Positions 15,361-43,572 of a stretch of DNA of 44,774 nt are shown piece after piece. Origin of the DNA: Klebsormidium nitens (taxonomy: Eukaryota; Plantae; Klebsormidiophyceae); assembly GCA_000708835.1 (NCBI GenBank), contig DF236998.1, positions 1-44,774 on the forward strand, given 5' to 3'. The translations under genes and the position numbers were made by a program. How positions within the stretch are numbered: the first letter of the stretch is position 1; each line of letters starts with the position of its first letter. The notes below the pieces were generated by a model that did not search any database, had not been told where the DNA came from, and saw nothing but the letters and a program-made list of their open reading frames with translations.

Positions 15361-15411
15361 CGCGGGGTTAATACCACCAGAGCTGGTTACGAACGAAGGG
15401 TTTGTTTTTAC

Positions 15412-15645: not shown

Positions 15646-15752
15646 CTGGAGAGTTGCACAGAGGGTTAGTAACGTTTGTGGCCTTCAACCGATCATGCTT
15701 TACAAAGAAGTTAAAGAATTTTGAAGTAGTGTCAAGAGTCCACAGCTTCGGT

Positions 15753-16630: not shown

Positions 16631-16753
16631 CTTTACATCACGGTTTTGCAAGCGCCCACTTACTGGGCAAGTCACAACCCAACCCCGGTAGACAAATTGA
16701 AGTTAAAAGCCCCATCGCATTGAAACCCATCTCACAACCCGTTCCTAACCCAC

Positions 16754-17011
16754 CTTGGCCAGCTCGTCCCGCACGACCCGCATGCTGCACTGGAAGTTCA
16801 TCGGCACCACGTCCTTCGCCAGCGATTCCGCCAGCTTCATTCCGTTCGCTTCCGCTTTCTCGCGGAGCTTGGCCACCCAGGGGTGGTCTTTCCCAAGCGA
16901 GAACGGTTCGTCCTTGATGGCGACGTTGATCTGCTCGAGGACAGCGTTGGCGTCGCCGAGAAGGGGCACGGCGGGCTTGCGCAGCTTGAGCTCGTCCTCC
17001 GAAATGTCAAT
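16754..17011 (-). CDS. HACL1: Duplicated exon 10b
   Basis: tgcag|ATTGAC..AAG|gtgggt; [21 protein letters not shown]...[11 protein letters not shown]; 258 nt; 12 differences from 10a, 10 of them synonymous. Confidence 0.7.
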
Positions 17012-17374
17012 CTGCATAAGAGAATTGTTTTGTTCTGACAGTCTCTTACTTTTCTGCTCCGGCAATGTGCTTTATTGGTTGTGGAACGGAACCGCCAAAG
17101 TTCTGACTTACTCACAAAACTTCGACGGGTTAGGAGATTCGGGAAATAAACAGCCAGGCTACAGAAATTTGTCTTTGCAAACTGTGAAAACAATCAGAAA
17201 TCAGAGAGAGGCGACGTTGCATTGCCGCTTCAGTGTCCAACCAAACCACCAATTGTACAATCGACATCTTTGCGAAGTCAGCAATCACAACATGGAAGTC
17301 AGAGGAAGGTCCTTGACGATTCTTAGTCTCTTCCTCCGAAAAAAGAAAAGCTGAGTGTGATCTAAGGGTATTGC

Positions 17375-22906: not shown

Positions 22907-23391
22907 GCAAACGACTGAGGAATCTGCCAACTTCCTAATTCCTATGCAGAAACGGACACGAAATCTCCCTTGCACAGAAGAGGAAGGAACTGAGAGTGCA
23001 CTGTGGCTCTGATCACGACTCATCTTTCGACAAACGACGAGTCGCGAAGGACTTTTGTGATACCAGCTTTACGAACAAGAGACACGCTGATCGTTCCCAA
23101 GGCTGCTGGCAACGTTGGACATCGTTCAGCAGCGACAGGCCGTACAGTGACTAGTCGCAGCGGAATCAGACGACGAAGAGCAGTCACGACAAGCCGCAAT
23201 TCCTTGTAGAAGCCCAAAGACTGCCAAAATGAAATGCCCAAAACCTGCATTTACGGCACTATCCGACACTATCCCACAGTCCAACCCAATGATTGGCAGG
23301 ATAGTCGATGGCCGAATTCTGGGCCTATGATGATCCAGAAAGCAGGTCTGTGAGCGACGTGACGTCGGTGTGACGCCACACGGCACCTCAC

Positions 23392-23543
23392 CTGGACGTA
23401 CTTGACGTCCTTGCTTTACCATGGTGGCTCCCCGGAGTGCAGCAGCCAGTTGAGTTGCGCGCCCACGACGAGTACCACGTCAGCGCCCACGAGCGCAAGG
23501 CCCTGAGCGGCCCCTGCGTTCAGCGGCTCGCTTTCCGGCACGA
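23392..23543 (-). pseudogene. Truncated copy of the 3' end of exon 9, marking the duplication junction
   Basis: [49 protein letters not shown]|gtgagg, homologous to 35983-36134. In-frame TAA at 23416-23418 and no acceptor. Confidence 0.9.
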
Positions 23544-24058
23544 AAGTATTGGTTGGCGTTTGACCGGAAATCCGGTTTGGTCTGCGAGCTTATTGCATGG
23601 TGGTAATTGATCACACCAGTCTTCAGTGAGGCATGTACTCTCCTTAGATGCCTAAAGTACGACACAACTCTAGCCTTCACAACCAACCTAGCCTGTTCAC
23701 AAACTCAGCATTTGATCTGGAAGGGACGAGCGCAAGAACGTGGCGCTCCCTTTGAGGCCGGGTGCTTTTCAATCGTAGAATGGGTAGGAAAATGATGGCC
23801 GTGCGATCGAGTGCATGAAGTCAGCGCTCCCAGGCGGAAGCTCGACAAGGCCTTTTTGTAAGCCTCTGCATGGCCGCTTTCAATCGGAACGCAGGGAGGA
23901 TAATGATTTCACTTCCGTCGCCTTCAACGGCAGACGGTATTTAAGAATCAGACTGTACACGCTCTGAAGCTTTCAAGTCTGCTATCGTAAAGAGGTGTCA
24001 AACGTCGTTAAAGTTCTGATCAAACCCACAACAAAGCTGCTGGCAAGCGAAGCAACTC

Positions 24059-24230
24059 TCAGTTCCTGCTGTGCATCCTCCCGCTCTCGGATCCAGCGAA
24101 CGGGTCGATGACGGCGTTGATGACGGCCGGCTTTTTCGCGGCAAACGCTTCCCGGCAGGCGGCCACGAGCTCGGCCGGAGTCCTCACGAAGTAACCCTTG
24201 CCTCCGAAGGCCTCGATGATCTGGTCGTAT
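24059..24230 (-). CDS. HACL1: Exon 13a (terminal)
   Basis: ttcag|ATAC..AACTGA; [12 protein letters not shown]...SGRMHSRN*, matching the plant HACL C-terminus (AESGRLQHKN, recalled). Confidence 0.92.
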
Positions 24231-27200
24231 CTGAATCAGGAAAGAGGCAAAAAATATTTAGAGACGAGATTGACAAGACCACAAGAGACGAGAACGCGGT
24301 GCCGCTGCGCTCCGTGCAGAATCCTTATGTAGACGTCAAGTAGACAAATATGTTCCGGCTTGGCGCAGGGCGTCGCGGACCAGTAAGCCGTAACTAGAAG
24401 GAAATGAGTGGGTACTTTTGCTGCAGATTTCCTTTTCAACCTTGTTTCCCCAGCGGATCTGACGAACATCAGCCCCACAATTGAAACCGAAGCGCGAACG
24501 TCAGGAACCGCGGGTTACCAGCATTGAAGACGTCATCTATCAGGGCTCAGCCTTCAGAGCTCCAACTTTGGGCAGAATGGGCAGAATAATGGACACCCGA
24601 CTTCGAAGAAGCCGCATTATCCGTGTGAGCTAAGAATGCAGAAGTCTACCAAAGCAAGCGGCATAGTAAAATGGGACTACGTCCGCACCTTGCTTCGGAC
24701 ACAAAGTCGGTGGGCGCCGGGTCGGACGCGTACGGACCGCCGAGCTCCGCGTCCTCCCTGCGATCGCCGCCGTAAATGCCGCTGTTGTTGAAGACGATCA
24801 CGACGACCGGCAGGTTATACCGGACAAGCACCTGCAACGTGCGGACGTCCGAAGTTTTGAGAAAGTTTCGATCCGGGCGGTCTGCAAACCTTGCGCAAGA
24901 GGCGTATGGAAAGAAGTTGGAGACATTGCGAACGGCAGCAAGTTACAAAGAGGCGAAAAGAACACCCAGCTCCAAATGACGCAGAAGCCGAGAATGATAA
25001 GTTTTGCGCATCTGCAACACGCCGGTTCCGAAGTTTCTGGAGAAGGGGTTGTTACGCGCACAAAGTGTGTGAGAGGTTTTCAAAACAATGTTCTAGACAC
25101 TGCGCACTCCGCGCGCTTCAACAACGAGAAACGAACACCGAGCGTCGAAACGACCGGAGGCCGAGGATGTCAGATTCGAGGCCTGGGCTTTGCAGTCCAG
25201 GAAGGCTGAAAGCCAAGAGCCAAGTCGTCTTCGTCAGCCGCCTCAAAGCGCTTCCTGTTCTTCTCCGAACATCAAATCCTGACAAATTGCAAATTGATTA
25301 TAACGGAGCTCTTCCTTGCCTCGCCTCAACGGCACTGAAAGCAAAGTTCCCCTCTTTGGCGACCAAGAGGGGCTTCTCGTCCTTCCCGAAAGAGTGTGAC
25401 TGTAAAGCCGAAAGTCTAGTTAAGAAACTCTTCTCCTTACCCCAACCTCAGTGGCACTGAAGCCAAAAGCGAAGCTTACCCTCGACGACGACTACGAGGC
25501 GCTTCGAGAAAGGTATTCCAAAAGATCGAAATGCTGGTTAGAAGAAAAACATTTCCCTGGCCTCGAGTGCAACGGTACTAAACCCAACAGTTGTACAGAC
25601 TGGTCAACACAAACCCTTCCCTCACCTCGACCTCAACGGCGCTAAACCCGAAAGCGGAGTCCCCTTCGACGGCAACAACGAGTCTCTTCCCGTCGTTGAC
25701 CACCGCAGCCGCGATAGCATACCCCATGCCCACGCCCATCGTGCCCCACGTGCCGGCGTCGAGGCGCGTACGCGGCTCTTCCTGGTTGAGAACCGTCCGT
25801 CCGACGTCCATTGTGTTGGCGCCCTCGGAAACCAGGATTGGATGAGGGCCTTCAACCTGTGGGTTTACAGAAATTTGGTGACCATTTTTGGCCTTCGGCT
25901 GATAGTGTTCCAGAGGGTTGGTGGGGTTTTGAGTCGGGTTAAGGTAAGGGTTCAAGTGCGTTCTGGTCGAGCACCGGCCACTCAACGTCCTCCGAAACCA
26001 GGACTGGGTGAGGGCCCTCGACCTGAGAAAAAGGGTTGAAAAAGGGTGTTAGGGTAATTGCGAGGGCGTCGAGGGGAGTGCGGGCCTCTTCCTGGTTGAG
26101 AACCGTCCGTCCGACGTCCATCGTGTTGGCGCCCTCGGAAACCACGATCGGGATGGGGACCTTTAACCTAGAGAATTATACGGAGGGTTAGTAACATTTT
26201 ATGGCTTTCAACCGATTGTGTTCCACAGAAGGTCAGTGGATTCCTTGAATTGGGGTAAAGGTTTATAGAGCATTCTGGTTCAACACCGTCCGGTGGACGT
26301 CCATCCCGTTGGCGCCACCGGGAACCGATGTGGGCCGTCGACCTTTGGGATTCTGCGGATGGTTAGCGAGGTTGTTGATTATTCTAATATGACACGGTGT
26401 ACTTGCTCCGCATGCCGGAGCAAACCTAGGAACTACTGAACGGAAATCGGGTTGCAGTATGAGAGTTTAAACTCTGCCAACCCTTCACAAAGCAAACTGC
26501 CTGGTGGAAGCCCGTGGATGCCTCTCAGCAGTACTGGTAGACCGCTTGAAGCAGATTCAGCCTTTTTGAATTTATCTCACAACTTCAAAGAGCTGGAAAA
26601 ACCCGCGATTTGCTGCCAAACCCTCTTCAGAACAGTTCCGAACCCGTCCTTGATCCAACTCACAAACCATGTCTCACCTCCCAGGGGGAACTCGTTACGC
26701 AAACCTTGCATTCCGCTTCTTAATGGACCAGAAAAAAAAATGCTGTGTGCGCTCTCAGCGCCTTCAAACCAACTTTATACCACCGCCGAACAATCTCGAT
26801 TCACCCCGAGACTTGAGGTCGTCTGGGGGTGATCCAAAGTTGGTTTGGAGGAGCCAACCCACATCAGCCCACACTTGACCCACTGGAAACCACTCCCACA
26901 TCACTCTCCACGCACTCTTAACCTACCTTTAACTCACCTTTGGCCATCTCGTCCGATACCACCCGCATGCCGCACCAAACAGTCCCAGCACCACAATCTT
27001 CATCAGCACCATATTCCCCCAAGGCAAATCGAAACCCCTCCATACAAACGGAAATCAGCCCCAACTATCTAAAACCGATCTCAAAACCGGTCCTAAACCC
27101 ACCTTGGCCAGCTCGTCCCGCACGACCCGCATGCTGCACTGGAAGTTCATCGGCACCACGTCCTTCGCCAGCGATTCCGCCAGCCTCTTTCCGTTCGCTT

Positions 27201-30200
27201 CCGCTTTCTCGCGGAGCTTTGCCACCCAGGGGTGGTCTTTCCCAAGGGAGAACGGCTCGTCTTTAATGGCGACGTTGATCTGCTCGAGCACCGCGTTTGC
27301 GTCGCCGAGAAGGGGCACGGCGGGCTTGCGCAGCTTGAGCTCGTCCTCGGAGATGTCAATCTGCGAAGAAACCACAAACCTTTTGTTTGGATAAGACAAA
27401 GTCTTGGTATTTCTTATACTGCTCCGGCACTTTGCTCTGATAAGGTGCGAACACCACTGCTACAGTTTATGTTACTCACCAAAAGCTACGAAGTTCGAGA
27501 TCCCTGAGCACGTACAGTCAGCTGGATAAATGCTTCTACAAACTGCCATTGCTAAAAACACCGCACTCACTGCAATGCCATCACTTGTACACAAGACAAG
27601 GCAACGCAAATGTAAGGCAAGCACGTTGGGGGAAGTCAAAGGGAGCTTTCTCTCATATGGCTTTGTTCGGCATACAGAGTGTGATTTGGAGGTTTGAGAA
27701 AGGCAGTCAAACCGCTGCAAGAAATCAGGTGGCCAAGAATGACCAAGCATGTCACATTTCATTGCCCTTCTTACTAACATCTTTTGGAGAAGCCGCGAAG
27801 GAACTTCACGCTTTTCCATGTGAAACCTGGAGGCGACACAGATGTGCAGCTAGCAGCGGCCATCCAAGGACGTACGAGAACCGAAAAAGCGTGCAAGCCG
27901 TCACGTACAAAGTGAAAGAAGGAGGACAACCTCTGATTTGCGGTTCCGTGAAAAATTGGGTTTGCAAACCAGATTAATGCTCGAGTAAACAACTAAGCGA
28001 CCAGAGTACAGATACTATCAACGCAAAGTGCGACGGTGCTTCGCTGCGTGCAAGGGCAATCATACGCATGCAGGCAAAATTGCCCCCTCCAGGATTTTGC
28101 ACAACTGACACGTCATCATTGCCCACCAAACAGCGTGGTAGAAGTTACAGGAAAGGAAGGGTCCACCAGCGAAAAAGTTGCCCGGGATCAAGCGAAAGAG
28201 GTGCACAATTAGCGACTTGCCAACTGCGAAGTGAAGTAGCGGCAAATATCGTGTGAAGCATGTAGCACCGGAAAAAATCATGGTGTCAGGCAAACGTTTC
28301 AAAGCGTAATTGGATGACGTTAGAGGAGTTAAAAACTGTTCACCAATCCAGGCTGGTCAAGACATGACAAGGCGAGGAGGCAGGAATTCCAGTCTTTATA
28401 TGCTGCTGTGCTGTACTTCGTTGAAGTTCAATGAACGACGTCAAAAGTCAGCTAGATACCAACGGTTTGTGGTTTCTGCTGCCACGTACTTTGCAGCAAA
28501 ATCCCGGACTATCCGAACGCAACGCTATTCAAGATTGGCCCAGACGGCCATGGTGGTGAGTCGTCCTGGCCCGTCATGTTTTGCAACATCCCCAAATACC
28601 AGCAAGAGCTCTCCTTGTTTGAGCAACAACAAATTTCAGCAGCTCTTAGCAAACGGACGACGACAGATTGGACCATGCGTCAGATGGACGAGCAAAAGGC
28701 ACAAGAACAACTTGCATGTTACCAAAAGCTTGCTTAAAACATAAAGAGGAGGCGACAATGGAGTAGAAAGTACATTCGTTGAGAAGCTGCCACAGCGTTG
28801 TAACCTTGGCAAAACCACTCAGGTCCTTTCGAGCGTTTGCCGGACAAGCTTCCCCAAAGTCAGCCAAACAATTCTGGACCTCGAATGGCCCCTTAGGGGC
28901 CAGGCAGTATTGCATCATCGCCCTCAGCTTTCGCAGAGGGCCTCTCTAACCTGTCCGGTAAGGAAGGTGTGAATCAGACGACATCAGGCTTTCTTTACTT
29001 TGAGGAAGCAGGGAATTCGAATACCCTGTACATGTACAACCAGGCCCAATATATTCGTCCTTACAGCTGCCAGCAATGAATAAAATCGTACGAGACTGCT
29101 CCCGCAATCAAGAAAACGACCTTTTGAATACAAAAGGGGAGACAGAAACAGAAACAGAAAACCGGGGTGACATAAGCATATCTGAGGTCAAATGAAAGCT
29201 CCTTTGGGGTTTCTTCCTTTAAATTTGTGTGGCGGCATAAAGCGAACCGTGATTCGCGGCGAGGTGCCGAGGGCATTCCGAAGGAGTAGGCAGAAAAGCG
29301 AACGGCAGTGGCCAAGAGTCACCCCGCACGTTATCTTCACTGCCCTTCATTGAAAGGTCTCTCAGCATCAAAAGTGGCATGCTTCCATACTAGGCCAGCA
29401 CTGGAGGGAAAAACTATTCGGGTAAAAGCGGCAGCTATCTGCTGTACATGAGCGGATCGACCGAGCCTGAAATCGGCTATGTAGGCACCCTAAAAACACA
29501 CAACTTATGGTTGCGGTCTTATGTATGTTTTGACTTCAAAAAAGACATGTGTCGCTTCTCCGGTGAAGGAAAGACAGCGGGCAGAAAACGCATCATAATC
29601 ATCCACGACCGGCGACGTGCGTCGTTGCTTGCACGGGCAATCACACGAAAGCACAAGCTCTGGCCCCTGGCCATGTATGCTGAAACGTCATCATTTGCCC
29701 TTGAAAAAAGGCCATTAAGTTCCTCAAAAGGTAGGACCCAACACTAGCGAGTGCATTTCACGACATCAAGCAGCACGTCAAGAGCTAGTCGCCAAACGAC
29801 AGGTTGACGAGTCTCAAAAGTCCCCTTGTAAGCACATGCGATAGCACTGAACACCGCGCCGACAGCGCTCTTCTGAAAACAGATCAGATTGACATCAGTG
29901 GGATCTGGTGCTGGTCATCTTCTCATATCATTCGGAATTTTACAAGTCAAGGAGGCAGGTATCGTAGTCTTCACATGCTGCATCCCAGCAGGTTGTGGAG
30001 ATTCAGGCATGACGCCCAAAGTCAGCTACCGTCTTACGGTATGTTTGGCAATATTAGTCCGCAAGACGACTCACAGGCTGTCCGGGTTTCTCTTACGACC
30101 TCTGGCCCAAGACGGCCATGGCAATAAGTCGTCCTCGCCTTTTAGCTTTCCAGAGATATCAGCAAGAAACGTCCTTGTTGGGGCCTTAACATTCAGCAAC

Positions 30201-33200: not shown

Positions 33201-36200
33201 GCACAAGGGAATCGGTGTCAGTCAACCATCCTCCACATGTGACACAGAGAACGACGTGGCAATCAAAGCAACCCTGGACCTTAGCCCTGCTGGGCCATAG
33301 CCACCTGTTCATCATTGCCGTCAAGCAAAGAAAGACAGCTCACATCAAACAATGGGCGAGGCAAGCCGGCACAAAGGATAGCAACTTAGACCTCGTAACG
33401 AGATAATCATTTCTGCAACCATCCTCTGCGCAGGCAAAAACCACCTTCAATCCGAACCCCGGACACCTGTTCCAAAGAACGTTGCATTTTGTGGAAGGTA
33501 GAAATTAAGACTTCACAATATTGAACCACCTTTCAAGGAAGAGTGCGCAACCTCAGAGAGCGCATTCCGACCGATCTCGCCAAAATAGTTAGCCGAAAAA
33601 CATTGTCCTAGAGCTTTAGTAGAGCCAAACGCCACCTTGGCAGAACAGCTCTCGAGAAAACACCTGTCAGCGATTGTTATAGAGGACACTATCGTTGGAG
33701 TCAACGGGGCTGCGAAAGGAGAGCACGTAAGTATGAAAACGCCAACACCTTTCAATCAGCAACAAGCACTTCACGGCGTCCGGCACAAATCCAAGGTTGG
33801 CAACGCGGTGCACATCTTAAACGCAGGCTTTACTGAGAAGCGCCAATGAAAGCGAAAGTCTCATAATGTCATGCCGCGTACACTAGCCAGCGTCTGCTTT
33901 TTATAAGACACGGTGCTGAGGCGGTCAGGCGTCCTCCGCTCCGAACCGTGACACAAAGGCCGTAAAAGCTGTTAGAAGCTGATTGTCGCTTACATGTGCC
34001 TCAAGGCAAGCCCGTCTTCTAACCCAGCGCAACGTGAGGTGCAATTCATGTGGATGACTAGCAACCGGCAAAGGCAAGAGACAGGTCAAAATTGGATAAG
34101 GCTTGTACAGCGAGACCAGAGGAAGCACATTGAAGAAGGCCAAGCCAACTTTCACGTGTGGATTCGGCTGACACTTCAACACTCACGGAGGTTTTTACGA
34201 TTCTAATAGCACCAAAACCCAGCCTGTCCGGACGATCATCATACATGGCATGGCGTCAATATTTCATGGCCCGTAAGCTGGCCAAAGGCGCCATTCATCA
34301 CCGCCAAGCTTCTTACGACCTCCAGTACTCAAACGAGGCACCCCACCATGCTGCTTTCAGCACAAGAAAGAACAACGTGCTGCAAATCTTGGATACTGCA
34401 CACAGCGAGACTTGCTGCATATGGGCACTAAAGAAATGATTGAGCTCGTCACGCCCGTTCACGCTGCTTTCACAAAAGAAGAATGGAACTGTTGACAATC
34501 TGGCGGTTGATGGCCCGCAACATCCTGCAATATCTGATCTCTGCTCTCAGTTCTTGAAAGTGTGCATCTCCCGATCCACGTATGCAGGTGATGGGCTATC
34601 AGACAACAGGGATATAATACCTGCCCTTAAGGCCAACCTAGTTGGTCATAAAAGCCCTCAATAGTACCGTTTGAGCAACAGTCATGTTAACAAAGTAATT
34701 GCTTCAATCGCGTTTCCCAAGCCTGAAACTGTGCATTGCAGTCAAAATCATATGAGCGAGTATTCCTTGAATCTGCTGATCTCACCACATATCGCACCAG
34801 GCAGGCCAGCGTACTCGTCACCAACCAACAGAAGCGAAATGTCGGACGGAGGCCGTTCCGTGATGTCACAGGCTCAGATTTGCTTGATCCTAGTGGACTC
34901 GGACTACCCAAAAGTTCTCACGAGCCTTTCCTAGCATGGCACCAACGAAGGGTTGAATAACGTTTGCATCTCCTAGCATCACCGACCTTAGAAGGGTGGC
35001 CTTAGAGAACTGTGGTGTGATGTTAACAAGGTGACTGTTTGAGGCGTCACCAAGGATCTAAGCAGACTTTCGTAGAGGGAAGCAAACTTAATTCCACAGG
35101 CGAGGGCGTCGCAAGTTGTAGGAACGTGTGGGTTGCAAACACCAAACCAACTTTTCTTCATGGCCCAAAAGACCGGCGACTGCATATCTAAAAAAACGGC
35201 TAGTAGCGGAACGACATGTGCAATAGCAATACGGGCTGAGACACACAGCGCTAGAGAACGCAAGGTCTCCAATTGGAAGGACAATAATGGACGACAGGCT
35301 GAGAGGGCGTGAAACTCGCGCGGCAGGGTAAGAGAAAGTCAACAAGAGGGTTCATATGGCGAGGACATATTGCAGACTAAAGCGTCTGCAAGAACTTGGA
35401 ACCTAGCGTGCGCAACAGCAGCAGAGGGACAAGGGCAATCGACTACACTTTCCTGATTGGCCCTGAGATGCCGTGGCCTGAATCTTCATTGCCCGAAATG
35501 AACGACTGCATTGCCAAATAGTAAGTAGCATACACGAAAGACAAGCCTTCTGCCGCCAGCGCGAATCAGGGCGTGGACGCAAGTGCTTGGGGGTGTTGAC
35601 CCATTGGCCACATATTTCCACGACGATGTCGCAAAGGCTTCGTGAAATATGGCCTCATGAACATGAATTCCTGGTAAAGGCAATTTAAGGCGGCTGGCGG
35701 CATTGCCGTCGTCATCAGCTGGAGCGAATACTACAGGTAGACGGGAAACACTTACATGGGATTACTCCAACAAGTGGATCAGCGGTATAAGCACTCGGAA
35801 ATTTGTTTTTCTTTGAAGGACAACAGACGAGGTCAGAGTTGACACTCCTGCTTTCAACCTTTCACAAGTTTGACAGTCATTTCACACTGAATGACAAACG
35901 TATTCCCTCTCGGACAATTCTGACTTTGAAAAGCAGGCTCCAGAGCAACGTGACGTCACGCTGACGTCACCTGCAACCTCACCTGGATGAACTTGACGTC
36001 CTTGCCCCACCGCGGCGGCTCCCCGAAGTGCAGCAGCCAGTTGAGCTGCGCGCCCACGACGAGTGCCACGTCAGCGCCCGCGAGCGCGAGGCTGCGCGCC
36101 GCGCCCGCGTTCAACGGGTGGCTGTCCGGCACGACGCCCTTCCCCATCGGCGTGGCGATGAACGGAATTCCGGTCCGGTCCACGAGCGAGCGGATCCCGT

Positions 36201-39200
36201 CCTCCGCGTGCGCGTACGCGGCGCCTTTGCCGAAGACGACGAGCGGGCTCCTGGCGTTCCGGAGGAGGGAGACGGCGGCGGCGACGTCGGGGGGGGGTGC
36301 GGAGAGGGCTTTGCGGAGCCCCCCCGGAGTGTAGAAGGGCTGGATGTCGACCAGCGCGTTGAGCAGGGCGGCGGCCTCGGCTTCCGAAACCTCCTGGTGA
36401 AGAACCTCTGCATGACGAAAAACTTCAAATAGGACAAATTAAGGAACTTAAACCCGGTTTGAGTAAGGGTTAGACATACAGCAGGCAGCAAGGGTTAGGT
36501 ACTGGCGTTTCTTCGACATTGGACGACTGTGAGACGGTCTTTACGACAATGACGTGGTGTGGAAAGAACTTGGGAAAAGACTTGACTCAGTGAGACGAGT
36601 TTGAGGACAAGCTTGCGCTAGGATTTGGAAGAAGGCGTCCGAGCACCCCAGGTCATCCTTGGGTTTCGGAGTAACAGTACAATTCTTTGAGGTCAGGACT
36701 ATCCGTGAACGAGGTTGGAAAGAGGTTCGGACGCTTTGTGAACGAGGCGAAAGCAACAAGTTCAAAAACCGACGGGATTTGCCAACTTTTGACAAGTGCC
36801 TTGAAGTGGATGAGCGAAGACATGGGACACAGTATGTGCGTCATTGAGTAGACCCTCCCGAGCTGGCAAAACCTTCATGACGCATGAAACACCAGCAATT
36901 TGGCACAATTCGTAGTCCAAAGTCCCTCCATATCCAGCCCTTTCAATAATTTCCTCGGATTTGTGTCGAAAGAAAAGAAAACGACAGAAAAGAAAAGAAA
37001 AGAAAACGAAAAACTCAAAAGATCGACCGACCTGCCGGCACGTCGACGTAAGCGGCCCCCGGCCTGCCCGCGGCCGCGGCGGACACCGCTGACTGGACGG
37101 TGTTGGGAACCGCGCGAACGTTCTCAGCGCGTCCGGCGTACTTGACAAACGGTTTTACGATCGCGATCTGGTCGAATTCCTGGAAGCCGCCCCTCCCGAC
37201 CTGCACGGAGTGAACGCACTTCTTTGAGCTGCCGTTTACAGGGCCTCACATCCGCGCCTATGGTTATAGAACAGACTCCTGCAAAGTCCCGGTCCTGAAG
37301 GCACGCACATATGCTGTCACAATTCAGCGCATCAACTTGGCAGGGCAGAAAACAGACTCATGTCAACAGAAAGGAGACCGTCAATTCCGTTTCAGTAAGG
37401 CATGTCGTGCCGTGCTTTGTCCAAAGTAGAGGCGAGCTAGACCTGCACCTCCGTAAGAGACAGAGATGGAACTGACTAAATCAATCTGCTCTTAGGAGCT
37501 TGAAGATGTTTGGTCACCACAGAATGATACCCCGATCGAGCTGAAACCGTAATAACAACGTGCTGACAGCAAAGTTTCGACACTGCTTCCAACAAAAGAG
37601 GATGCGAGTCCCCTTTGCTAACAAGCAAACGACGGCAAGGTAAGCAGAATAAGCGCGAAGCTCACCTCCTCAGTCGGAGCGCTCCCCGAGATCATAACGA
37701 TCGGCCAGCTGTTGGCTAACCCGTTGCTCAACCCGGCTAACCCATGTACCGCCCCCGGGCCAGACACGGTTAAGAGAGCCCCCGGGACGCCGGTTAGGTA
37801 ACCCGCAGCGCCAGCAGCGTAACCCGCGGCTTGCTCGTTTCGTAAACCGATGAAGCGAATGCCTGCTTTCTGAGCGAAGGTTGCGAGGGCCGTTACAGGG
37901 ATGCCAACAACACCGAAGAGATACCTGGGGGGAGGGGGTTGGGATGGTTGAACGGAAAACTAAAGCGACGATAAATCGAAACAACTTGACCAACTACTGG
38001 GAGAGTTTCGACTTTTGCAAACAGAATTCGGGGGTATTCTCAGCGACCAGAATTCCACAAGCTATCGAAGATTTTTGAAGAACAGAGATCCGAAGATGCC
38101 TGAGTATGCATTCAATGTCCCGCACGTCCTTTACATTTCCGTGATTTTTCTTTGACAAGTTTCTGCCGTTCAGCTGACACCGCTCAGAATGACCTAATCT
38201 TGCAGCATCTGCAAGTCCTGCAGATAGCTGGTTACATTGATGACTCAAAAGATATTTGGGCGTGTTCCCTGCCCTCAAGCAAAGCGTAGCTTCAGGTACC
38301 AGACTAAACGATAATCAGTGGTAGTAACTCTTTCACTGGCTCTTGCTTGCAATGGGCAAGACGATCCGGACAAGAGTCGAGAAATGCACACACTTCCCGG
38401 ATAGCCCTACGAAGCCTGCCGAAGGTGCCGTTTCCACACACTTCGTCAACCAGAAGCCGTCCTTAGAGACACGGAGCCACGTCCACTATGCTCAAAATGG
38501 CCAATTATCTCAAGAAGCTTTCACCCCGTTGCAAGAGAAGCTTGCTGATTACTACTGCCTCCTACATGGACAGAGAAATTCTGGGAGAACCTTCCAGTAC
38601 CTTATGAAAGGTGCGCAAAGTGCACATAAAAGCATTCACAGAATTTGAAGACTAGAGAAAATTCTCGATCAAACAAACGCTACGCTCGCTGTACGTTGTT
38701 TGCCATAAAGTTCGAAAGATCGAAGGCTACTACAGCAAATGACAATGCGTTCACTAAAAGGAGCTAGCAGCCACCAGAGTCGTGGAAAAGGAATTTTGAG
38801 AGAGGTTTGCTGATGACATTTCTTCAGCAAACTTTCCAGGCGGATAGCTGCATAAGCTGAGCATCTATGCTACCGCAACCATGGCCTTCTCCGGATGAAC
38901 AAGACGAAGAACGACGACAGCAAGCAATCAGATTATGATGAGATACTAATGTTTACAATTGACAAGTGCGGTCACGAGTTTGTTCAAACTACGTTCTACG
39001 ACTCCTCAACTTCTGCCTAGACGCTTGTCCTTCTACCGCCTTCATTTCCAGCCCTTCCAATTCCTGAAGCCACCGCTAGAGCCCTTCGTTTACGACTCTT
39101 TTTGCGTCCCCTCGTAACGCTCAACCCCGCTACGAAACTCCGACCCCAATTGAGCGGCGTGGAAGGATTCCACTCACTTGACGCCCATCTTCGCCAGCGA

Positions 39201-42200
39201 GCGGGCGACCAGGTCCGCTCCATCAACGGGCTTTGCCTGCGAAGTCCCCGTCGAAGCCACAGAGCTGGTCGCCACTTCCTTGAGCGGCTGCCCCGCTTTT
39301 TCCGCCTTCTCCGCGGCGCCGAGGAAGTGCTCGGCGACCTTGCGGCGCTGGATCTTGCCGGTGGCGGTGCGGGGCATCTCGGTCGCGATGAAGATCTGCA
39401 AAAATAATCTATATTAAAAGACAAGAGCACAAAGAACGAAAACTCATCTAAAGCTTTAGATGAGAGTGTGGGAAGAAGGGCCGCAAACATCCAGTAGGTG
39501 GACACAAGCAGATGAAGGAGAGAGAACCTAAAAGAGCGGCTCGCTTTGGATGACTGAGAATGGTAGTGGGGAGGCGGAAGCGCTGGCGAGTTTTGCGAGC
39601 TGTTTAGCCCAGATTGTGGGCCGCTCGATTCAGTATGCGCTTGGCGCCTTGATTCATCTCACAAGGTTTTCAGTGCTTCAATGAGTAGCAACAAACGTCA
39701 AAGGAACTGACCACCCTCGGTGACGGAATGGCTTCTTGAACCCGATGAATTCACAACAGCTCATACACCTCCGAATCCACTTCCAATGCGACTAGAGGAA
39801 CGAACTGTAGCTCTGGGAGCTACTGGAATCCCCAACCAATCCAAAGCAACGTCGACGAGTACCTCCTGAAAGTCTGTGATCGGTCGCTTATCGCTGAGAG
39901 ATTGGGCAGCTTTGGTCATGACGATTCAAGGAAAAGCAGCAGTCCCCATCCTTTGCTCCTGCTCACCTTCTTTGGCAGCTTGAAAGCCGAGAGGCGGTCC
40001 TTAATGTGCGCCAGAATATCTTCCCCGGTAACCTTCTCGTTCGAATTAAGCACAACCGCCGCGTTGACCTCCTCGCCGTACTTCTCGTCGGGCGCCGCAA
40101 ACGCCACCGCCTCCGATACGGCGGGGTGAGCCAGGAGCGCTTCGTCGACCTCGATCGGGGAGATCTTCTCGCCTGCGACACACAGGGGAACCATCACTAG
40201 GCTGCTCAGACGAAGGTCCAACCGTTTTTGGCGCAGAGTGTCTTTATACTTCTAGCAGAATTCCGCTCCGCGTCTAGCAGCACGACCCAAGCACCCTCTC
40301 ACCCATTGGCAGGAACACAAATACGAAGGGCGATGAGGTACACAAAGCTCCCATCACCATCGCCTATCGCCAGCAATCTTGCAGAGAGTCGCCGCATCTT
40401 TTAGCGACCGTGTTCTAAATAAAAGGCGCTTTTGCTAGCAAAACGAGGCGCTTTCAGGTCTCCCAATCACTAGAAACAAGAGATTGCGGTCATTGAAATC
40501 TCGGGTCCAGCTGATCCTCGCGCTTATATCCTAAGGTCACCGAATCCTCGGGTCTTATCCTGGGTGTCCACCAATCCTCGCATCTACATCTTGGCTCACC
40601 TAGAAATCTTGCTCTTCGTTTGTTACTGCACGAGGAACTTTGAGATTTCCTGCTTGATACAACGGGAAAGCACTGTAAGACATGGCAAGAAAGGCTTACC
40701 TCCCCGGTTGATGAGCTCCTTGATGCGCCCCGTCAACGTGAGATAGCCCTCGCTGTCCAGCTTGCCGCGGTCCCCAGTGTGGAACCACCCGCTGGTAAAC
40801 GCAACCTTGTTAGCCTCCGGGTTAGCCTTGTAACCCTTGGTTACATTAGCGCCCTTGATGCTGACCTCACCAATCTCCCCAGTGGGCACCTGGCGACCAC
40901 GAGAACCGCGTTTGTCAGCACAGAAAAGTTTCGTCCGACGTGAATCTTTTCCTTTGCAAGTACTTATATCACCCAACGGTGAACAATCTACATCGTCCAC
41001 CTACTGTAGGAAGTGCTCGACAGGTGGCATGCATGGCAGAAAGCCTCGTGACCTGATCCAGACCACGACACGAAAGCAAGAAACACCAGTCCTCTCCCCT
41101 CAGAAATTTTCCTGCCGACATCCGCTTGTCCTACATATTCCCCGCAAGGAGAGAGCTCGTCTGCGAGAGCAGGTGCACTTCAACCGTGTGCTTTCGCAGA
41201 AAATGACCTGAAAATCTATTCGAACTCTCCCTTTTCGGTAAAACACGCAGCCAAGCGCCCGGCAGGAGGCCTCACCGGCCGGTCCTGCTCGTCCAGCACC
41301 GCGAGCTCGATCCCGGTCGCCTTGCCGACCGTCCCGGGCTTGTGCGCCCCGTGCTTCGGCAGCGGGTTGCTCGTCATCTGGTGGCTCGCCTCCGTCATCG
41401 CGTACGCCTCGAGCACCGGCGCGTCGAACTCCGCCTCTAGTTTCTCCAGCACCGCGGGCGCGAGCGAGCTGCTGCAGCTGCGGATGAAACGCAGCGTCGG
41501 GCGCTTCTCGGGCGGAACGGGCGCCGTCTTCTGCTTCGCCAGCAAAATTTGGTGGATCGTCGGCACTGCGGTGTACCACGTGATTTGGTGCGCGAGCGCG
41601 TCCTCCCAGAAAGTGCTAGCGCTGAAGCGGCCCCCCGCGGGGAGCACGACGGTGCCGCCCGAGGACAGGGTTGCGAGGAGGGAAGCCATGAGCCCGTGCA
41701 CGTGGAAGAGGGGCATCACGATCTGGGGAGAAGGAGGGTACGTGTCGATTTTGTGAGATGTTGTGAAAAACAGACTTCGTAACGGTTGGAATTCCAGTCG
41801 AGATCTATGTCGGGCATCATCATAAAGCGATGGAGGGGTCTTCTGAAGTTGCAAGGCTTCGAAAATGAAGGGGTTATGAGGGATGTTCTTTACAGTGTGC
41901 ATCGGAAAAGAAGGGAAAACAAGGCAGAGGAAAGATGAGCTAATCGACCTGCAGGCTTGAGAATATAAGAGAGGCATCGAATTGCAGAATGAGAAAGCAG
42001 GTACTGTCTTTAGGCATACGACTGAGCACGCTGAGGACTGGCAAATCCTCAATCTCGAAACCAGCAACTCAGAAGAAACTTATGTGTGGACTGATCAGGT
42101 AACCCTGCCACGTGTGTGCAGATTGATATGGGTGAATGTGCAATCCTCTCCCCTCTTCGATGACACCTGTAGAACCGGCAACATGTAAAGACAGTGCGCT

Positions 42201-43572
42201 TCTCATCCGATCAGAAGCTCACCAGTGTCCTGTCCTCTGAAGTTAGCTCGTACGTCTTGATGATGTTGCGAATCGACGTGGCCAGGTTCAAGTGCGACAG
42301 CGGCACGCCCTTCGGCCGGCTCGTGGTCCCCGACGTGTGCAAAAACAGGGCCTCGTCATCTTCCTCTGGCAGCGGCCCTGCATCCTTAACCTCCTCTTTC
42401 TTCGCATCGAGGTCTCCTGACTTCCCCGCAACTTTCACCCCCTCTTCCAGGCTGGGGAAGGAGACAACTAGGGTGGGAAGGTTGAGGGTCTTGGCGGCGG
42501 CCTCGGCGTTCGGGACGCCCTCCTTTGGGACAACGAGGAACGACGACTTTGCGTCCTCGATGTAGAACGTAAACTCGTCCTCTTTGTAGGCGGCGTTCAG
42601 GGGCGCGGCGACCGCGCGGATGCGAGCAACCGCCAAGAAAGCAACAACAAACTGCAGGCAGAGATGAAGACGGACCTTCTGTTGCTTGACCAGGAATAAT
42701 GCTGATTGGGCATTGCTCGAACTTCATAACATATCTGCAGCTTTTCAGACTAGCGGCTCGAATGCAAGTAGTAGATAACGGCTTAAGGTCTGATTCCAAT
42801 TGCCCCAAACTTGTGGCACAATTCGAGAGCATCTCAGCTTTTGGACTCTTGTTCATCAGATTCTGTTTGAGGTAGGATTGTGGGGAAACACTGTCTATGT
42901 GGCCAAATAGACAGACCGCGCAAGGGGAGCTGCATTAGAACTTATTTGAATCCAGAGAAACATGCAATCAGCCCATGGCTATGACTGCCTGCATGAAGTG
43001 CTTGCCTAACAGTGGTTGCAGACTTTGATGAGCTTTGTTTGTGGGGCAACCATTTGTCAAAACATTTTAGACCAGAACTTTATTGATGGGAATTCACCAG
43101 CCCCACAGACGAAGAAATTGGTCAATCAAGTTTTCTGCACCAGTTAAATGCACCAAGATATTCAAAAAGTTTCTGTATTGCTGCGCCACAGCCACCATGC
43201 CACACATGAGGGTCAGACTGTTGCTTGCATTGGCACCTTCTCAATTCAGGAATCCTTTAGCAAAGACCTGGCTAGAGAGCTACCATTGCTTCTGCAAATC
43301 ATCACAATATACTCATGTAACCTGAGGGTGCTTATTGAATGTTTGTTTGAGGGCGAGCGCACCTCGATCGTGTTGGGGAACGCAAGTGTCACTAGGTCCC
43401 CAGGCTTCACCCCAAAACTCCTGAGCTGAGCCCCAACCGACTCAATCTGCTCAGTCAACTGCGCATGGGTCAGCTTTGGACCACCACCAGCAACTACCAA
43501 CCCAGGGGCGCTTCCTTTCTTGGCGCCATCGAGCACTCCTGGCAAGGTCGAAGCAGACACTGATGATGTCAT
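24059..43572 (-). CDS. AAE3-HACL1: 13-exon fusion gene: oxalate--CoA ligase (AAE3-type) + oxalyl-CoA decarboxylase / 2-hydroxyacyl-CoA lyase (HACL1/OCD1-type), about 1118 aa
   Basis: Join of 43572-43363, 42651-42223, 41722-41276, 40889-40700, 40172-39967, 39395-39178, 37924-37666, 37200-37032, 36407-35983, 27360-27103, 25856-25626, 24831-24689 and 24230-24059. All junctions are GT-AG, phases agree and there are no internal stops. Motifs: [40 protein letters not shown]; then [21 protein letters not shown]. Confidence 0.92.
24689..24831 (-). CDS. HACL1: Exon 12a
   Basis: tgcag|GTG..AG|gtgcgg; [25 protein letters not shown]...[11 protein letters not shown]. Confidence 0.92.
25205..25590 (-). 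pseudogene. Decayed copies of the 3' half of exon 11 in intron 11a
   Basis: 25205-25262 reads [16 protein letters not shown]; 25321-25387 reads [16 protein letters not shown]; 25443-25508 reads [19 protein letters not shown] (1-nt shift); 25561-25590 reads VGFSTVALE. Confidence 0.7.
25626..25856 (-). CDS. HACL1: Exon 11a
   Basis: cacag|GTT..GAG|gtgagg; [22 protein letters not shown] and [10 protein letters not shown] are ThDP-binding motifs. Confidence 0.93.
25950..26976 (-). pseudogene. Stutter array in intron 10a: three copies of acceptor + 5' exon 11, and one copy of the exon 10 end + donor
   Basis: Copies start at 26022 ([12 protein letters not shown]..), 26167 (frameshift, then [26 protein letters not shown]) and 26342 (deleted). 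26938-26976 reads [12 protein letters not shown]|gtgagt. Confidence 0.85.
27103..27360 (-). CDS. HACL1: Exon 10a
   Basis: tcgcag|ATT..AAG|gtgggt; [13 protein letters not shown]...[20 protein letters not shown]. Confidence 0.92.
28054..28124 (-). ncRNA. Box C/D-like unit
   Basis: GGGCA-ATGATGA...ATGA-t-TGCCC: canonical C box and a 5-bp stem. Confidence 0.5.
33257..33320 (-). ncRNA. Box C/D-like unit
   Basis: cGGCA-ATGATGA-acaggtggctatggcccagcagggctaaggtccagggttgct-TTGA-t-TGCCa; paralog of 21761-21822. Confidence 0.5.
34251..34306 (-). ncRNA. Box C/D-like unit with a compensated stem
   Basis: TGGCG-GTGATGA-atggcgcctttggccagcttacgggccatgaaata-TTGA-CGCCA. Confidence 0.5.
35983..36407 (-). CDS. 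HACL1: Exon 9 (HACL central domain)
   Basis: tgcag|AG..CAG|gtgagg; [23 protein letters not shown]...[13 protein letters not shown]...[21 protein letters not shown]. Confidence 0.93.
37032..37200 (-). CDS. HACL1: Exon 8
   Basis: gtgcag|GTC..GCAG|gtcggt; [18 protein letters not shown]...[13 protein letters not shown]. Confidence 0.92.
37666..37924 (-). CDS. HACL1: Exon 7 (PYR domain, catalytic Glu in RNEQ)
   Basis: ccccag|GTATCTC..GAG|gtgagc; [11 protein letters not shown]...[18 protein letters not shown]...[17 protein letters not shown]...WPIVMISGS. Not in the ORF track; translated by hand. Confidence 0.93.
39178..39395 (-). CDS. AAE3-HACL1: Exon 6, the fusion exon (ligase C-terminus + linker + ThDP-enzyme N-terminus)
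   Basis: [73 protein letters not shown], with no stop. Confidence 0.94.
39967..40172 (-). CDS. AAE3: Exon 5
   Basis: [25 protein letters not shown]...[13 protein letters not shown]...LSAFKLPKK. Confidence 0.94.
40495..40602. repeat. Degenerate 30-bp minisatellite (about 3 units) in intron 4
   Basis: ATCCTCG at 40514, 40544 and 40574 with similar ATC(C/T)T..CACC tails. Confidence 0.6.
40700..40889 (-). CDS. AAE3: Exon 4
   Basis: [27 protein letters not shown]...GWFHTGDRG...[10 protein letters not shown]. Confidence 0.94.
41276..41722 (-). CDS. AAE3: Exon 3
   Basis: [11 protein letters not shown]...[14 protein letters not shown]...[12 protein letters not shown]...[19 protein letters not shown]. 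Confidence 0.95.
42223..42651 (-). CDS. AAE3: Exon 2 (AMP-binding P-loop)
   Basis: FVVAFLAV...APLNAAY...[23 protein letters not shown]. Confidence 0.95.
43363..43572 (-). CDS. AAE3: Exon 1 (coding start by homology)
   Basis: [14 protein letters not shown]...LTHAQL...[17 protein letters not shown]|gtgcgc. The Met aligns with the AAE3 N-terminus, but the frame is open further upstream. Confidence 0.85.

What the first reader, a model, noticed from the sequence alone, without database searches (positions are those of the whole stretch)
24059..43572. Bifunctional oxalate-degradation fusion: oxalate--CoA ligase joined to an oxalyl-CoA decarboxylase/HACL
The AAE3-type ligase end ([13 protein letters not shown]) and the HACL/OCD start ([15 protein letters not shown]) sit in one exon, joined by a ~30 aa Ala/Ser/Thr/Lys-rich linker, so this is not a gene-prediction merge. 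In land plants AAE3 (oxalate to oxalyl-CoA) and OCD1/HACL1 (oxalyl-CoA to formyl-CoA + CO2) are separate genes for consecutive steps (established). I do not know of a described fusion, but cannot search for one. It is Rosetta-stone support that plant-type HACL acts on oxalyl-CoA and suggests substrate channelling. It is also a candidate single-gene tool for oxalate reduction (inference).
Basis: partly seen in the sequence, partly recalled or inferred. Interest (0 to 1): 0.88.

Follow-up and report, generated by a model that had tools for sequence, protein, structure and literature searches.

The report
Oxalate ligase–decarboxylase fusion gene, widespread
The Klebsormidium nitens gene really does join an oxalate-CoA ligase to an oxalyl-CoA decarboxylase/HACL in one protein, but the same fusion is already in public protein sets for dozens of green algae, bryophytes, a red alga and Chromera, so it is an old, common arrangement and not a new one.

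Summary
A 13-exon minus-strand gene runs from the ATG at 43572 to the stop at 24059 and encodes 1118 aa. Exon 6 (39178-39395) holds the last 25 residues of an AAE3-type oxalate-CoA ligase, a 32-aa linker and the first 16 residues of an OXC/HACL thiamine enzyme.

Spliced RNA contigs from four studies join exon 5 to exon 6 and exon 6 to exon 7.

The window is Klebsormidium nitens scaffold DF236998.1. The public annotation wrongly splits this gene into a 511-aa ligase model lacking exon 6 and a 618-aa HACL model that starts at an internal ATG of exon 6.

The fusion is not new. 47 protein clusters carry all five Pfam domains. They come from Chlorokybus, Zygnematophyceae, Sphagnum, two liverworts, many chlorophytes, Galdieria and Chromera. 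Trees of both halves follow the species tree, and the unfused vascular-plant genes nest among the fused bryophyte genes. The fusion is therefore ancestral and was split later.

I found no paper describing it.

One new detail: about half of the transcripts read through the exon 6 donor, hit a stop at once and end about 260 nt into intron 6, giving a ligase-only isoform. One contig carries an untemplated poly(A) tail at 38920.

A word search of this scan's notes found no earlier record of the fusion.

The parts
43363..43572 (-). Exon 1: start codon at 43572 and start of the AMP-binding domain
   Evidence: Pfam AMP-binding on 43360-43572. The exon 1/2 borders were chosen by best fit to Sphagnum and Mesotaenium orthologues, with GT..AG. 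The intron position after ...FPNT(I/L)E is shared with Marchantia and Sphagnum.
42223..42651 (-). Exon 2: AMP-binding domain with the P-loop [10 protein letters not shown]
   Evidence: Pfam AMP-binding at 79 bits. The 3' border is fixed by the RNA contig's loose end at 41723, which reads the end of exon 2.
41276..41722 (-). Exon 3: core of the oxalate-CoA ligase
   Evidence: Best solved matches are oxalyl-CoA synthetase 6qjz (E 3.7e-54) and Arabidopsis AAE3 5ie0.
40700..40889 (-). Exon 4: end of the large ligase domain and the hinge (…[10 protein letters not shown])
   Evidence: RNA joints in four runs. The phase-1 intron after INRG is shared with the bryophyte genes.
39967..40172 (-). Exon 5: AMP-binding_C domain
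   Evidence: Pfam AMP-binding_C at 52 bits. The RNA joint 39967|39395 is present in four runs.
39178..39395 (-). Exon 6, the junction exon: last 25 aa of the ligase (with the GKIQRR lysine motif), the 32-aa linker and the first 16 aa of the HACL/OXC half
   Evidence: It is spliced to exon 5 and to exon 7 in all four runs.
38920..39177 (-). Alternative 3' end. Read-through of the exon 6 donor gives AAG TGA (a stop at 39174-39176), then about 255 nt of 3' UTR inside intron 6. The product is a ligase-only isoform.
   Evidence: Contigs 38847/38920/38940/39036-39205 occur in all four runs, while the rest of intron 6 has no cover. One contig (X7) carries 23 untemplated T before 38920, which is a poly(A) tail on the minus strand. 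A TGTAA motif lies at 38953-38957 and the genome has no A run there.
37666..37924 (-). Exon 7: TPP_enzyme_N (pyrimidine-binding domain, with the NEQ glutamate)
   Evidence: Pfam at 78.5 bits. Best solved matches are OXC/HACL 8vzj and 6xn8. RNA joints.
37032..37200 (-). Exon 8: end of the N domain
   Evidence: RNA joints. P0202 threads exactly.
35983..36407 (-). Exon 9: TPP_enzyme_M
   Evidence: Pfam at 94 bits. RNA joints are, and the loose end at 35983 reads exon 10.
27103..27360 (-). Exon 10, reached across the 8622-nt intron 9
   Evidence: Exact threading of P0202. The RNA loose end matches 27331-27360 with 0 mismatches, against 2 mismatches for the copy at 16982-17011.
25626..25856 (-). 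Exon 11: start of TPP_enzyme_C with the GDS…NN thiamine diphosphate motif
   Evidence: Pfam and threading.
24689..24831 (-). Exon 12: TPP_enzyme_C
   Evidence: Threading. The intron position after …EVE is shared with Marchantia, Sphagnum and Selaginella.
24059..24230 (-). Exon 13 and the TGA stop. The protein ends -SRN, which is not a PTS1-type ending.
   Evidence: Threading, Pfam and the comparison of C-termini.

Best explanation
This is one gene of Klebsormidium nitens encoding a 1118-aa bifunctional enzyme.

The N-terminal half is an AAE3/Pcs60-type ANL ligase. It would convert oxalate, ATP and CoA to oxalyl-CoA. [quoted passage not shown] By analogy with solved OXC tetramers, the decarboxylase half probably forms the oligomeric core with the ligases tethered around it, so the labile intermediate is made next to its consumer. 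That arrangement is inferred, not shown.

The fusion is the ancestral state of the green lineage and is shared with Galdieria and Chromera. It was later split in vascular plants and probably in some algae.

In K. nitens the locus makes two mRNAs. A spliced one encodes the fusion. A second reads through the exon 6 donor, stops at once and is polyadenylated in intron 6; it encodes the ligase with a 48-aa tail (the 32-aa linker plus 16 HACL residues).

Shown here: gene structure, splicing, domains, orthology and distribution. Inferred: both activities, substrate, channelling, cytosolic location, and any regulation of the isoform ratio.
For: - Domains and best solved relatives.
- Exon 5 to 6 and exon 6 to 7 splices in four runs from four studies, all GT..AG.
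- A full 13-exon open frame of 1118 aa, matching the 1089-1162 aa of most fused orthologues compared.
- The public HACL model P0202 begins with the ligase's own tail ([12 protein letters not shown]…). The public ligase model ends at 39751, before exon 6, so it lacks that motif.
- 47 clusters carry all five domains. They include complete ORFs from transcriptome assemblies (Trinity, MMETSP, TSA) and an intron-free contig (2-5 kb length class) carrying the whole Sphagnum protein.
- The ESM Atlas holds a cluster with the fused architecture.
- Trees of both halves mirror each other and the species tree. Klebsormidium is sister to Zygnematophyceae plus embryophytes (SH-aLRT 97 and 96).
- Three intron positions are shared with Marchantia and Sphagnum.
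- Contig depths: the ligase exons are roughly equal to the HACL exons plus the intron 6 tail. X1 733-1000 versus 418+352; X7 341 versus 138+109; X19 47 versus 19+35.
Against: - No single contig spans both halves. The graph breaks at the 39176 branch point, and the exon 6 to 7 joint has only 30 letters on the exon 6 side, one short of the tool's own bridging rule.
- The runs are only guessed to be RNA, though the spliced joints and a poly(A) tail argue that they are.
- Contigs cannot exclude a transcription start inside exon 6 that would give a HACL-only mRNA.
- In run X9 the HACL plus tail depth (107+25) exceeds the ligase depth (102).
- No enzyme activity, protein size or localisation was tested.
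- Whether the C-terminal half prefers oxalyl-CoA over 2-hydroxyacyl-CoAs cannot be read from sequence. Its best solved matches are labelled both ways.
Confidence: 0.85

Rival explanations
1. There are two separate neighbouring genes, as in the public annotation (a 511-aa ligase and a 618-aa HACL). The exon 6 to 7 join would then belong to a HACL mRNA that starts inside or just before exon 6.
For: The GenBank annotation of GCA_000708835.1 calls them separately. Contigs cannot show transcript starts, and no contig spans both halves. In run X9 the HACL depth equals the ligase depth although a short isoform is also present.
Against: - The annotated ligase would lack the conserved C-terminal lysine motif. 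That motif sits at the start of the annotated HACL model, 51 residues before its TPP_enzyme_N domain.
- Exon 5 is spliced to exon 6 in all four runs. The HACL contig's only upstream continuation is exon 6, with no alternative first exon.
- All streptophyte-alga and bryophyte orthologues found are fused, including transcript-derived ORFs.
- In three of the four runs the depths fit ligase = HACL + short isoform.
Confidence: 0.05
2. The fusion is real but works on other substrates. For example, it could activate a 2-hydroxy acid and cleave the 2-hydroxyacyl-CoA (alpha-oxidation-like), or run in the synthase direction, rather than degrading oxalate.
For: The closest solved relatives of the C-terminal half are labelled both 2-hydroxyacyl-CoA lyase/synthase and oxalyl-CoA decarboxylase. 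UniProt names the fused proteins 2-hydroxyacyl-CoA lyase. Chlorophyte and Chromera members end in PTS1-like tripeptides such as -SKL, -AKL and -SKM, pointing to peroxisomes, where alpha-oxidation takes place in animals.
Against: The ligase half's best solved matches are all oxalate-specific enzymes: Lathyrus OCS, Arabidopsis AAE3 and yeast Pcs60. The C-terminal half is orthologous to vascular-plant OXC, whose Arabidopsis member decarboxylates oxalyl-CoA (PMC8004701). Fusing two consecutive steps is the simplest reading.
Confidence: 0.12
3. The short read-through transcript is splicing noise or a decay intermediate, not a functional ligase-only isoform.
For: Only one contig shows a poly(A) tail, and contig ends differ between runs (38847, 38920, 38940, 39036). 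A stop straight after a phase-2 GTGAGT donor is automatic, not a designed feature. Contig depth is a poor measure of abundance, as the tool itself warns.
Against: The first roughly 250 nt of intron 6 are covered in all four studies at about 0.2 to 1.9 times the HACL depth. The remaining roughly 900 nt of the intron have none, unlike the uniform, low retention of introns 3-5 seen only in X1. The tail is untemplated, and a TGTAA motif lies 33 nt upstream. The encoded ligase is complete.
Confidence: 0.3

Closest known systems
Fused AAE3-HACL proteins of other algae and bryophytes (e.g. Chlorokybus Chrsp75S07584 = P0005, Mesotaenium ME000129S00316 = P0157, Sphagnum fallax BDL97_09G066300 = P0151, Marchantia paleacea Mapa_006291 = P0152)
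   Same: They have the same five-domain order and nearly the same length (1100-1105 aa against 1118). Each half is about 65% identical to the nearest of them. Three intron positions are shared with the two bryophyte genes examined, and the trees are congruent.
   Different: In K. nitens the whole junction lies in one exon, and the next intron comes 16 residues into the HACL half. Marchantia and Sphagnum instead have a phase-1 intron inside the linker. The linker sequence is not conserved (14-68 aa). The K. nitens gene is split in the public annotation.
Arabidopsis AAE3 (oxalate-CoA ligase, PDB 5ie0) and Lathyrus OCS (6qjz)
   Same: They are the best solved matches of the N-terminal half. The P-loop, hinge and C-terminal GKIQRR motifs are present. 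The ligase part ends at the same point as the 514-aa Arabidopsis protein.
   Different: Those are stand-alone cytosolic proteins of about 515 aa. Here the chain continues into a linker and a second enzyme.
Plant OXC / HACL (Arabidopsis AtOXC, PMC8004701), bacterial oxalyl-CoA decarboxylase (2c31, 2q27) and HACL/HACS (8vzd, 6xn8)
   Same: The C-terminal half has TPP_enzyme_N, M and C over the full length, the cofactor-activating glutamate and the GDS…NN motif. E-values are 1e-149 to 1e-139. It is orthologous to vascular-plant OXC.
   Different: Those enzymes are stand-alone and start at the point where the linker ends here.
Yeast Pcs60 (oxalyl-CoA synthetase, 8aff) with the separate peroxisomal thiamine enzyme Pxp1
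   Same: Pcs60 is a solved homologue of the ligase half. From my own knowledge, Pxp1 is a homologue of the C-terminal half; it was not compared here. The chlorophyte fusions carry PTS1-like ends, like the peroxisomal yeast pair (PMC7474679).
   Different: These are two genes in yeast. The K. nitens protein ends -SRN, without a PTS1-type tripeptide.

Membership tests
ANL superfamily, AAE3/Pcs60-type oxalate-CoA ligase | AMP-binding (PF00501) plus AMP-binding_C (PF13193) domains | tested here: met
   exons 1-4 cover PF00501 positions 15-383, and exon 5 gives PF13193 at 52 bits.
ANL superfamily, AAE3/Pcs60-type oxalate-CoA ligase | Core motifs: the P-loop [ST]SG[ST]TxxPKG and the C-terminal catalytic lysine motif PxTxxGKIxR | tested here: met
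   [10 protein letters not shown] is in exon 2 and [11 protein letters not shown] in exon 6. The latter aligns to 5ie0 residues 487-511.
ANL superfamily, AAE3/Pcs60-type oxalate-CoA ligase | Closest characterised relatives are oxalate-specific ligases rather than other acyl-CoA synthetases | tested here: met
   only four solved sequences pass E 1e-5, and all are oxalate-CoA ligases (6qjz, 5ie0, 8atd, 8aff).
ANL superfamily, AAE3/Pcs60-type oxalate-CoA ligase | Oxalate-dependent oxalyl-CoA formation | not testable with these tools
   Needs an enzyme assay.
Thiamine-diphosphate OXC/HACL family | TPP_enzyme_N, M and C domains in order | tested here: met
   (P0202 is the window's own C-terminal half).
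Thiamine-diphosphate OXC/HACL family | Cofactor-binding GD[GS]…NN motif and the activating glutamate in the N domain | tested here: met
   EGDSAFGF…VFNNSG spans exons 11-12 and [11 protein letters not shown] lies in exon 7. I read the role of these residues from general knowledge of the family.
Thiamine-diphosphate OXC/HACL family | Nearest relatives are OXC/HACL rather than acetolactate synthase or pyruvate decarboxylase | tested here: met
   OXC/HACL chains score 430-503 bits. On exon 7 alone, acetolactate synthases score at most 45 bits against 102 for OXC.
Thiamine-diphosphate OXC/HACL family | Preference for oxalyl-CoA over 2-hydroxyacyl-CoA | not testable with these tools
   It is inferred only from orthology to Arabidopsis OXC (PMC8004701).
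Fused AAE3-HACL family of algae and bryophytes | All five domains in a single open frame, in the order ligase-linker-HACL | tested here: met
   for the window. for 47 clusters elsewhere.
Fused AAE3-HACL family of algae and bryophytes | Both halves orthologous to the fused proteins (congruent trees) | tested here: met
   the window groups with streptophyte fused proteins (SH-aLRT 97 and 96). These are quick-search trees without bootstraps.
Fused AAE3-HACL family of algae and bryophytes | One mRNA molecule carries both halves | tested here: inconclusive
   The exon 5-6 and exon 6-7 joints are present in four runs, but no contig bridges the branch point at 39176. Long reads are needed.

The most novel reading that the evidence does not exclude
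The K. nitens locus may be a living intermediate of gene fission. A polyadenylation site in the intron just after the junction lets the same gene release a free ligase or the bifunctional enzyme. An equivalent linker-adjacent intron may have been the breakpoint at which vascular plants split the gene: the bryophyte fusions have a phase-1 intron in the linker, and the unfused Selaginella HACL has a phase-1 intron at the same relative place, 7 residues before the DGN motif. If the isoform ratio is regulated, it would set how much oxalyl-CoA escapes decarboxylation.
Probability: 0.25. Interest if true: 0.6.

Novelty: new member of a known kind. Interest (0 to 1): 0.4.

Why it matters
- It corrects the gene model of a reference streptophyte alga: three public models (ligase, HACL and a C-terminal fragment) where the first two are one gene.
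- It shows that the AAE3-OXC pair studied as two genes in crops was a single gene in the ancestors of land plants, and still is in mosses and liverworts.
- That is independent genomic support that the two enzymes act in one pathway.
- It offers natural single-chain enzymes for oxalate-removal engineering.
- It offers a possible case study of gene fission through intronic polyadenylation.

It is not a new kind of enzyme. The fused proteins have been sitting in public databases, mostly unnamed or labelled only as 2-hydroxyacyl-CoA lyase.

Tried and rejected
- I considered using the 72-aa junction exon as the query for the one exhaustive protein search. I chose exon 3 instead. later showed the ligase tail alone scores only about 20 bits, so the junction query would probably have failed.
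- The spliced 1118-aa protein has no reference, so I could not hand it to the database, structure or cluster tools. I used the orthologues P0005, P0151 and P0157 and the public half-model P0202 in its place.
- My early guess that the organism was a chlorophyte or a dinoflagellate (long introns, TGTAA motif) was wrong. P0202 threads at 100% and the record is K. nitens.
- Use of the second exon 10 copy (16982-17011) by the main mRNA is rejected for the abundant isoform. The RNA loose end matches exon 10 at 27331-27360 exactly.
- Treating the stop right after the exon 6 donor as a special feature is rejected. It follows automatically from a phase-2 GTGAGT donor.
- Rfam at gathering thresholds finds nothing in the window.
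- Eight literature searches and five papers read gave no description of a natural fusion. That library lacks most subscription journals, so this is not proof that none exists.
- I did not run a structure prediction. A single-chain model would not fix the relative placement of the two halves.
Full report
**What is there**

On the minus strand the region 24059-43572 holds stop-free stretches that translate into an acyl-activating enzyme followed by a thiamine-diphosphate enzyme.

- Pfam places AMP-binding on four exon pieces and AMP-binding_C on a fifth. It places TPP_enzyme_N, TPP_enzyme_M and TPP_enzyme_C on the later exons.
- The largest ligase exon matches only oxalate-CoA ligases among solved structures: Lathyrus OCS 6qjz at E 3.7e-54, Arabidopsis AAE3 5ie0, and yeast Pcs60 8atd/8aff.
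- The C-terminal half matches oxalyl-CoA decarboxylases and 2-hydroxyacyl-CoA lyases/synthases at E 1e-149 to 1e-127. Acetolactate synthases score far lower.

**The junction**

Exon 6 is 39178-39395, bordered by a ...tttttgcag acceptor and an AA|GTGAGT donor.

- Its first 25 residues align to residues 487-511 of the 514-residue Arabidopsis AAE3, which is the very end of that enzyme and includes the GKIQRR lysine motif.
- A 32-residue linker rich in Ala, Ser, Thr, Lys and Glu follows.
- From VDGADL onward the chain aligns with residues 3-10 onward of solved OXC/HACL proteins.

The ATG is at 43572 and the stop codon ends at 24059.

**Gene model**

I laid Logan contigs from four runs of four different studies on 35900-41750. 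Every run showed the same six GT..AG joints, which define exons 3 to 9.

- The contig carrying exons 3-4-5-6 runs without a branch to the end of exon 6.
- The contig carrying exons 7-8-9 extends 30 letters across the splice into exon 6.
- The break between the two contigs is a graph branch point, because a third set of contigs continues from exon 6 straight into intron 6.

The public K. nitens protein P0202 (618 aa) threads onto the window at 100% identity across eight exons. That fixes exons 6-13, including the 8622-nt intron 9. Exons 1 and 2 were set by the RNA loose end and by best fit to the orthologues.

The result is 13 exons and 1118 residues with no internal stop.

**Identity of the genome and the annotation error**

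The window is scaffold DF236998.1 of Klebsormidium nitens GCA_000708835.1, with the same coordinates. The public annotation has three models here:

- a 511-aa ligase (43572 down to 39751, ending in intron 5, so it lacks exon 6 and its lysine motif);
- the 618-aa 'pyruvate decarboxylase family protein', which begins at an internal ATG of exon 6 (39377). It therefore starts with the ligase's own last residues, [12 protein letters not shown]…, 51 residues before its first thiamine domain;
- a 342-aa TPP_enzyme_C model on a duplicated 3' cassette further downstream.

The RNA joints contradict the first two models.

**The fusion is not new**

An exhaustive HMMER search with exon 3 against 1.84 billion cluster representatives listed several long proteins among the best 150. 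Pfam showed that two of the nine I scanned, P0005 (1105 aa) and P0010 (1233 aa), have the same five-domain order. The other seven are NRPS-like, reductase or unrelated fusions.

Searches seeded with P0005 and P0151 then found 47 clusters at 90% identity with all five domains, plus fragments that span the junction. Named sources are:

- streptophyte algae: Chlorokybus, Spirogloea, Mesotaenium, six Closterium strains;
- bryophytes: Sphagnum fallax, Marchantia paleacea, Calypogeia fissa;
- chlorophytes: Trebouxia, Myrmecia, Symbiochloris, Coccomyxa, Botryococcus, Chlorella, Micractinium, Auxenochlorella, Chromochloris, Chlamydomonas eustigma and UWO241, Polytomella, Ostreobium, Chloropicon;
- two Galdieria species and Chromera velia.

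Several are complete ORFs from transcriptome assemblies. The exact Sphagnum protein also sits on a contig in the 2-5 kb length class, too short to hold the gene's introns, so these are real fused mRNAs.

UniProt names many of them 2-hydroxyacyl-CoA lyase. One Coccomyxa record is labelled 'probable 2-hydroxyacyl-CoA lyase at C-terminar half'. The ESM Atlas has a 51-member eukaryotic cluster with this architecture.

**Evolution**

Trees of the HACL half and of the ligase half are congruent with each other and with the species tree.

- K. nitens is sister to Zygnematophyceae plus embryophytes (SH-aLRT 97 and 96).
- The unfused vascular-plant proteins nest inside the embryophyte clade together with the fused moss and liverwort proteins (99 in the HACL tree).
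- In Selaginella the HACL gene is flanked by F-box and PPR genes, not by a ligase, so that separation is real.

The fusion is therefore ancestral and was split on the way to vascular plants. Dunaliella, Haematococcus, Pyropia and Porphyridium appear unfused, but given the K. nitens case some of those may be annotation splits.

These are quick-search trees without bootstraps, and Chromera sits on a long branch.

**Gene structure compared**

Marchantia and Sphagnum share three intron positions with K. nitens: after …FPNT(I/L)E, after …ELINRG (phase 1), and after …EVE.

They differ at the junction. The bryophytes have a phase-1 intron inside the linker, 11-13 residues before the DGN motif. K. nitens has no linker intron, and its next intron comes 16 residues into the HACL half.

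The unfused Selaginella gene has a phase-1 intron 7 residues before DGN, preceded by two short unrelated exons. This fits a fission at the linker intron, but it does not prove one.

**A second product**

In all four runs, contigs continue from exon 6 into intron 6 and stop at 38847-39036. The remaining roughly 900 nt of the intron have no cover.

One contig carries 23 untemplated T before 38920, which is a poly(A) tail on the coding strand. The genome has no A run there, and a TGTAA motif lies at 38953-38957.

Read-through turns AA|GT GAG into AAG TGA. The short mRNA therefore encodes the complete ligase plus a 48-aa tail (the 32-aa linker and 16 HACL residues), then stops.

| Run | Ligase exons | HACL exons | Intron 6 tail |
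|---|---|---|---|
| X1 | 733-1000 | 418 | 352 |
| X7 | 341 | 138 | 109 |
| X9 | 102 | 107 | 25 |
| X19 | 47 | 19 | 35 |

These depths roughly fit ligase = HACL + tail. That argues for two 3' ends of one transcription unit and against an abundant HACL-only mRNA. Contig depth is a weak measure, so I treat the isoform as likely and its function as open. The immediate stop is an automatic consequence of a phase-2 GTGAGT donor and is not evidence of design.

**How it most likely works**

By orthology, the N-terminal half makes oxalyl-CoA and the C-terminal half decarboxylates it to formyl-CoA. AtAAE3, MtAAE3 and yeast Pcs60 are oxalate-specific, and AtOXC decarboxylates oxalyl-CoA (PMC8004701).

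The linker is unconserved in sequence and varies from 14 to 68 residues across the family, which is typical of a flexible tether.

Streptophyte and Galdieria proteins end in -HRN, -SRN or -SHN, and AtOXC is cytosolic. Most chlorophyte proteins compared and the Chromera protein end in PTS1-like tripeptides, so the location probably differs between lineages.

Activities, channelling, oligomeric state and location are all inferences.

**Literature**

Eight full-text searches and five papers read gave no description of a natural ligase-decarboxylase fusion. Comparative papers on plant OXC list Physcomitrium and Chlamydomonas sequences without mentioning it (PMC9090294).

The library lacks most subscription journals, so this absence is weak evidence.

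A word search of this scan's own notes returned nothing on the fusion.

**Verdict**

The novelty claim fails at the level of architecture.

What is new is the corrected K. nitens gene model, the mapping of the fusion as ancestral with bryophytes still fused, and the ligase-only isoform made by intronic polyadenylation. Interest is moderate.

Noticed in passing
window 13909-17020 (minus strand): A second copy of exons 10-13 lies about 7 kb downstream of the gene's stop. It is 88-96% identical in protein to the real exons, with no stops in the aligned parts. GenBank annotates it as a separate 342-aa TPP_enzyme_C gene. The abundant mRNA uses exon 10 at 27360, not the copy at 17011 (2 mismatches). 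A C-terminal half alone could not bind thiamine diphosphate productively.
   Followed up: partly
window 23389-23541 (minus strand): This is a degenerate partial copy of exon 9, about 74% identical in protein, with an in-frame stop where the real exon has …PPRWGKD. Together with the cassette at 13909-17020 it suggests a tandem duplication of the gene's 3' part, from mid-exon 9 onward. Only the last four exons stay intact.
   Followed up: partly
window 26065-26175, 26266-26466, and 15747-16496 (minus strand): There are several extra copies of the first part of exon 11 (…[17 protein letters not shown]…). They lie in intron 10 and in the matching intron of the second cassette, forming a local tandem array of pseudo-exon fragments.
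   Followed up: no
window 30207-30234 (minus strand), inside the 8.6-kb intron 9: In two runs (X1, X7) exon 9 is also joined to an exon that starts at 30234, after a ttag acceptor. The frame runs into a stop after 13 codons. This minor isoform would truncate the HACL half; it may be a decay target or a non-coding host transcript.
   Followed up: partly
window 17375-35495: Earlier notes of this scan describe box C/D snoRNA-like repeat units in the giant intron. Rfam at gathering thresholds finds no known RNA family anywhere in the window. I did not examine the units.
   Followed up: no
L002:5535-5995 and L003:8154-8985 (Marchantia paleacea and Sphagnum fallax fused genes); L004:6267-6325 (Selaginella HACL): The bryophyte fusions carry a phase-1 intron inside the linker. 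The unfused Selaginella gene has a phase-1 intron at the same relative position, just upstream of the DGN motif, preceded by two short unrelated exons. This may mark the fission point.
   Followed up: partly
C-termini of P0156, P0163, P0176, P0187, P0010, P0186 and other fused proteins: Most chlorophyte fused proteins compared and the Chromera protein end in PTS1-like tripeptides (-SKL, -AKL, -SKM, -SKI, -ANL). Streptophyte and Galdieria ones end in -HRN, -SRN or -SHN. This suggests a peroxisomal location in one group and a cytosolic one in the other.
   Followed up: no
P0001 (3462 aa), P0004/P0170/P0180 (about 1600 aa, Closterium): Some Closterium records are about 500 residues longer than the other fusions. 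One representative of 3462 aa matches the ligase exon four times. These may be tandem-gene merges or larger fusions.
   Followed up: no
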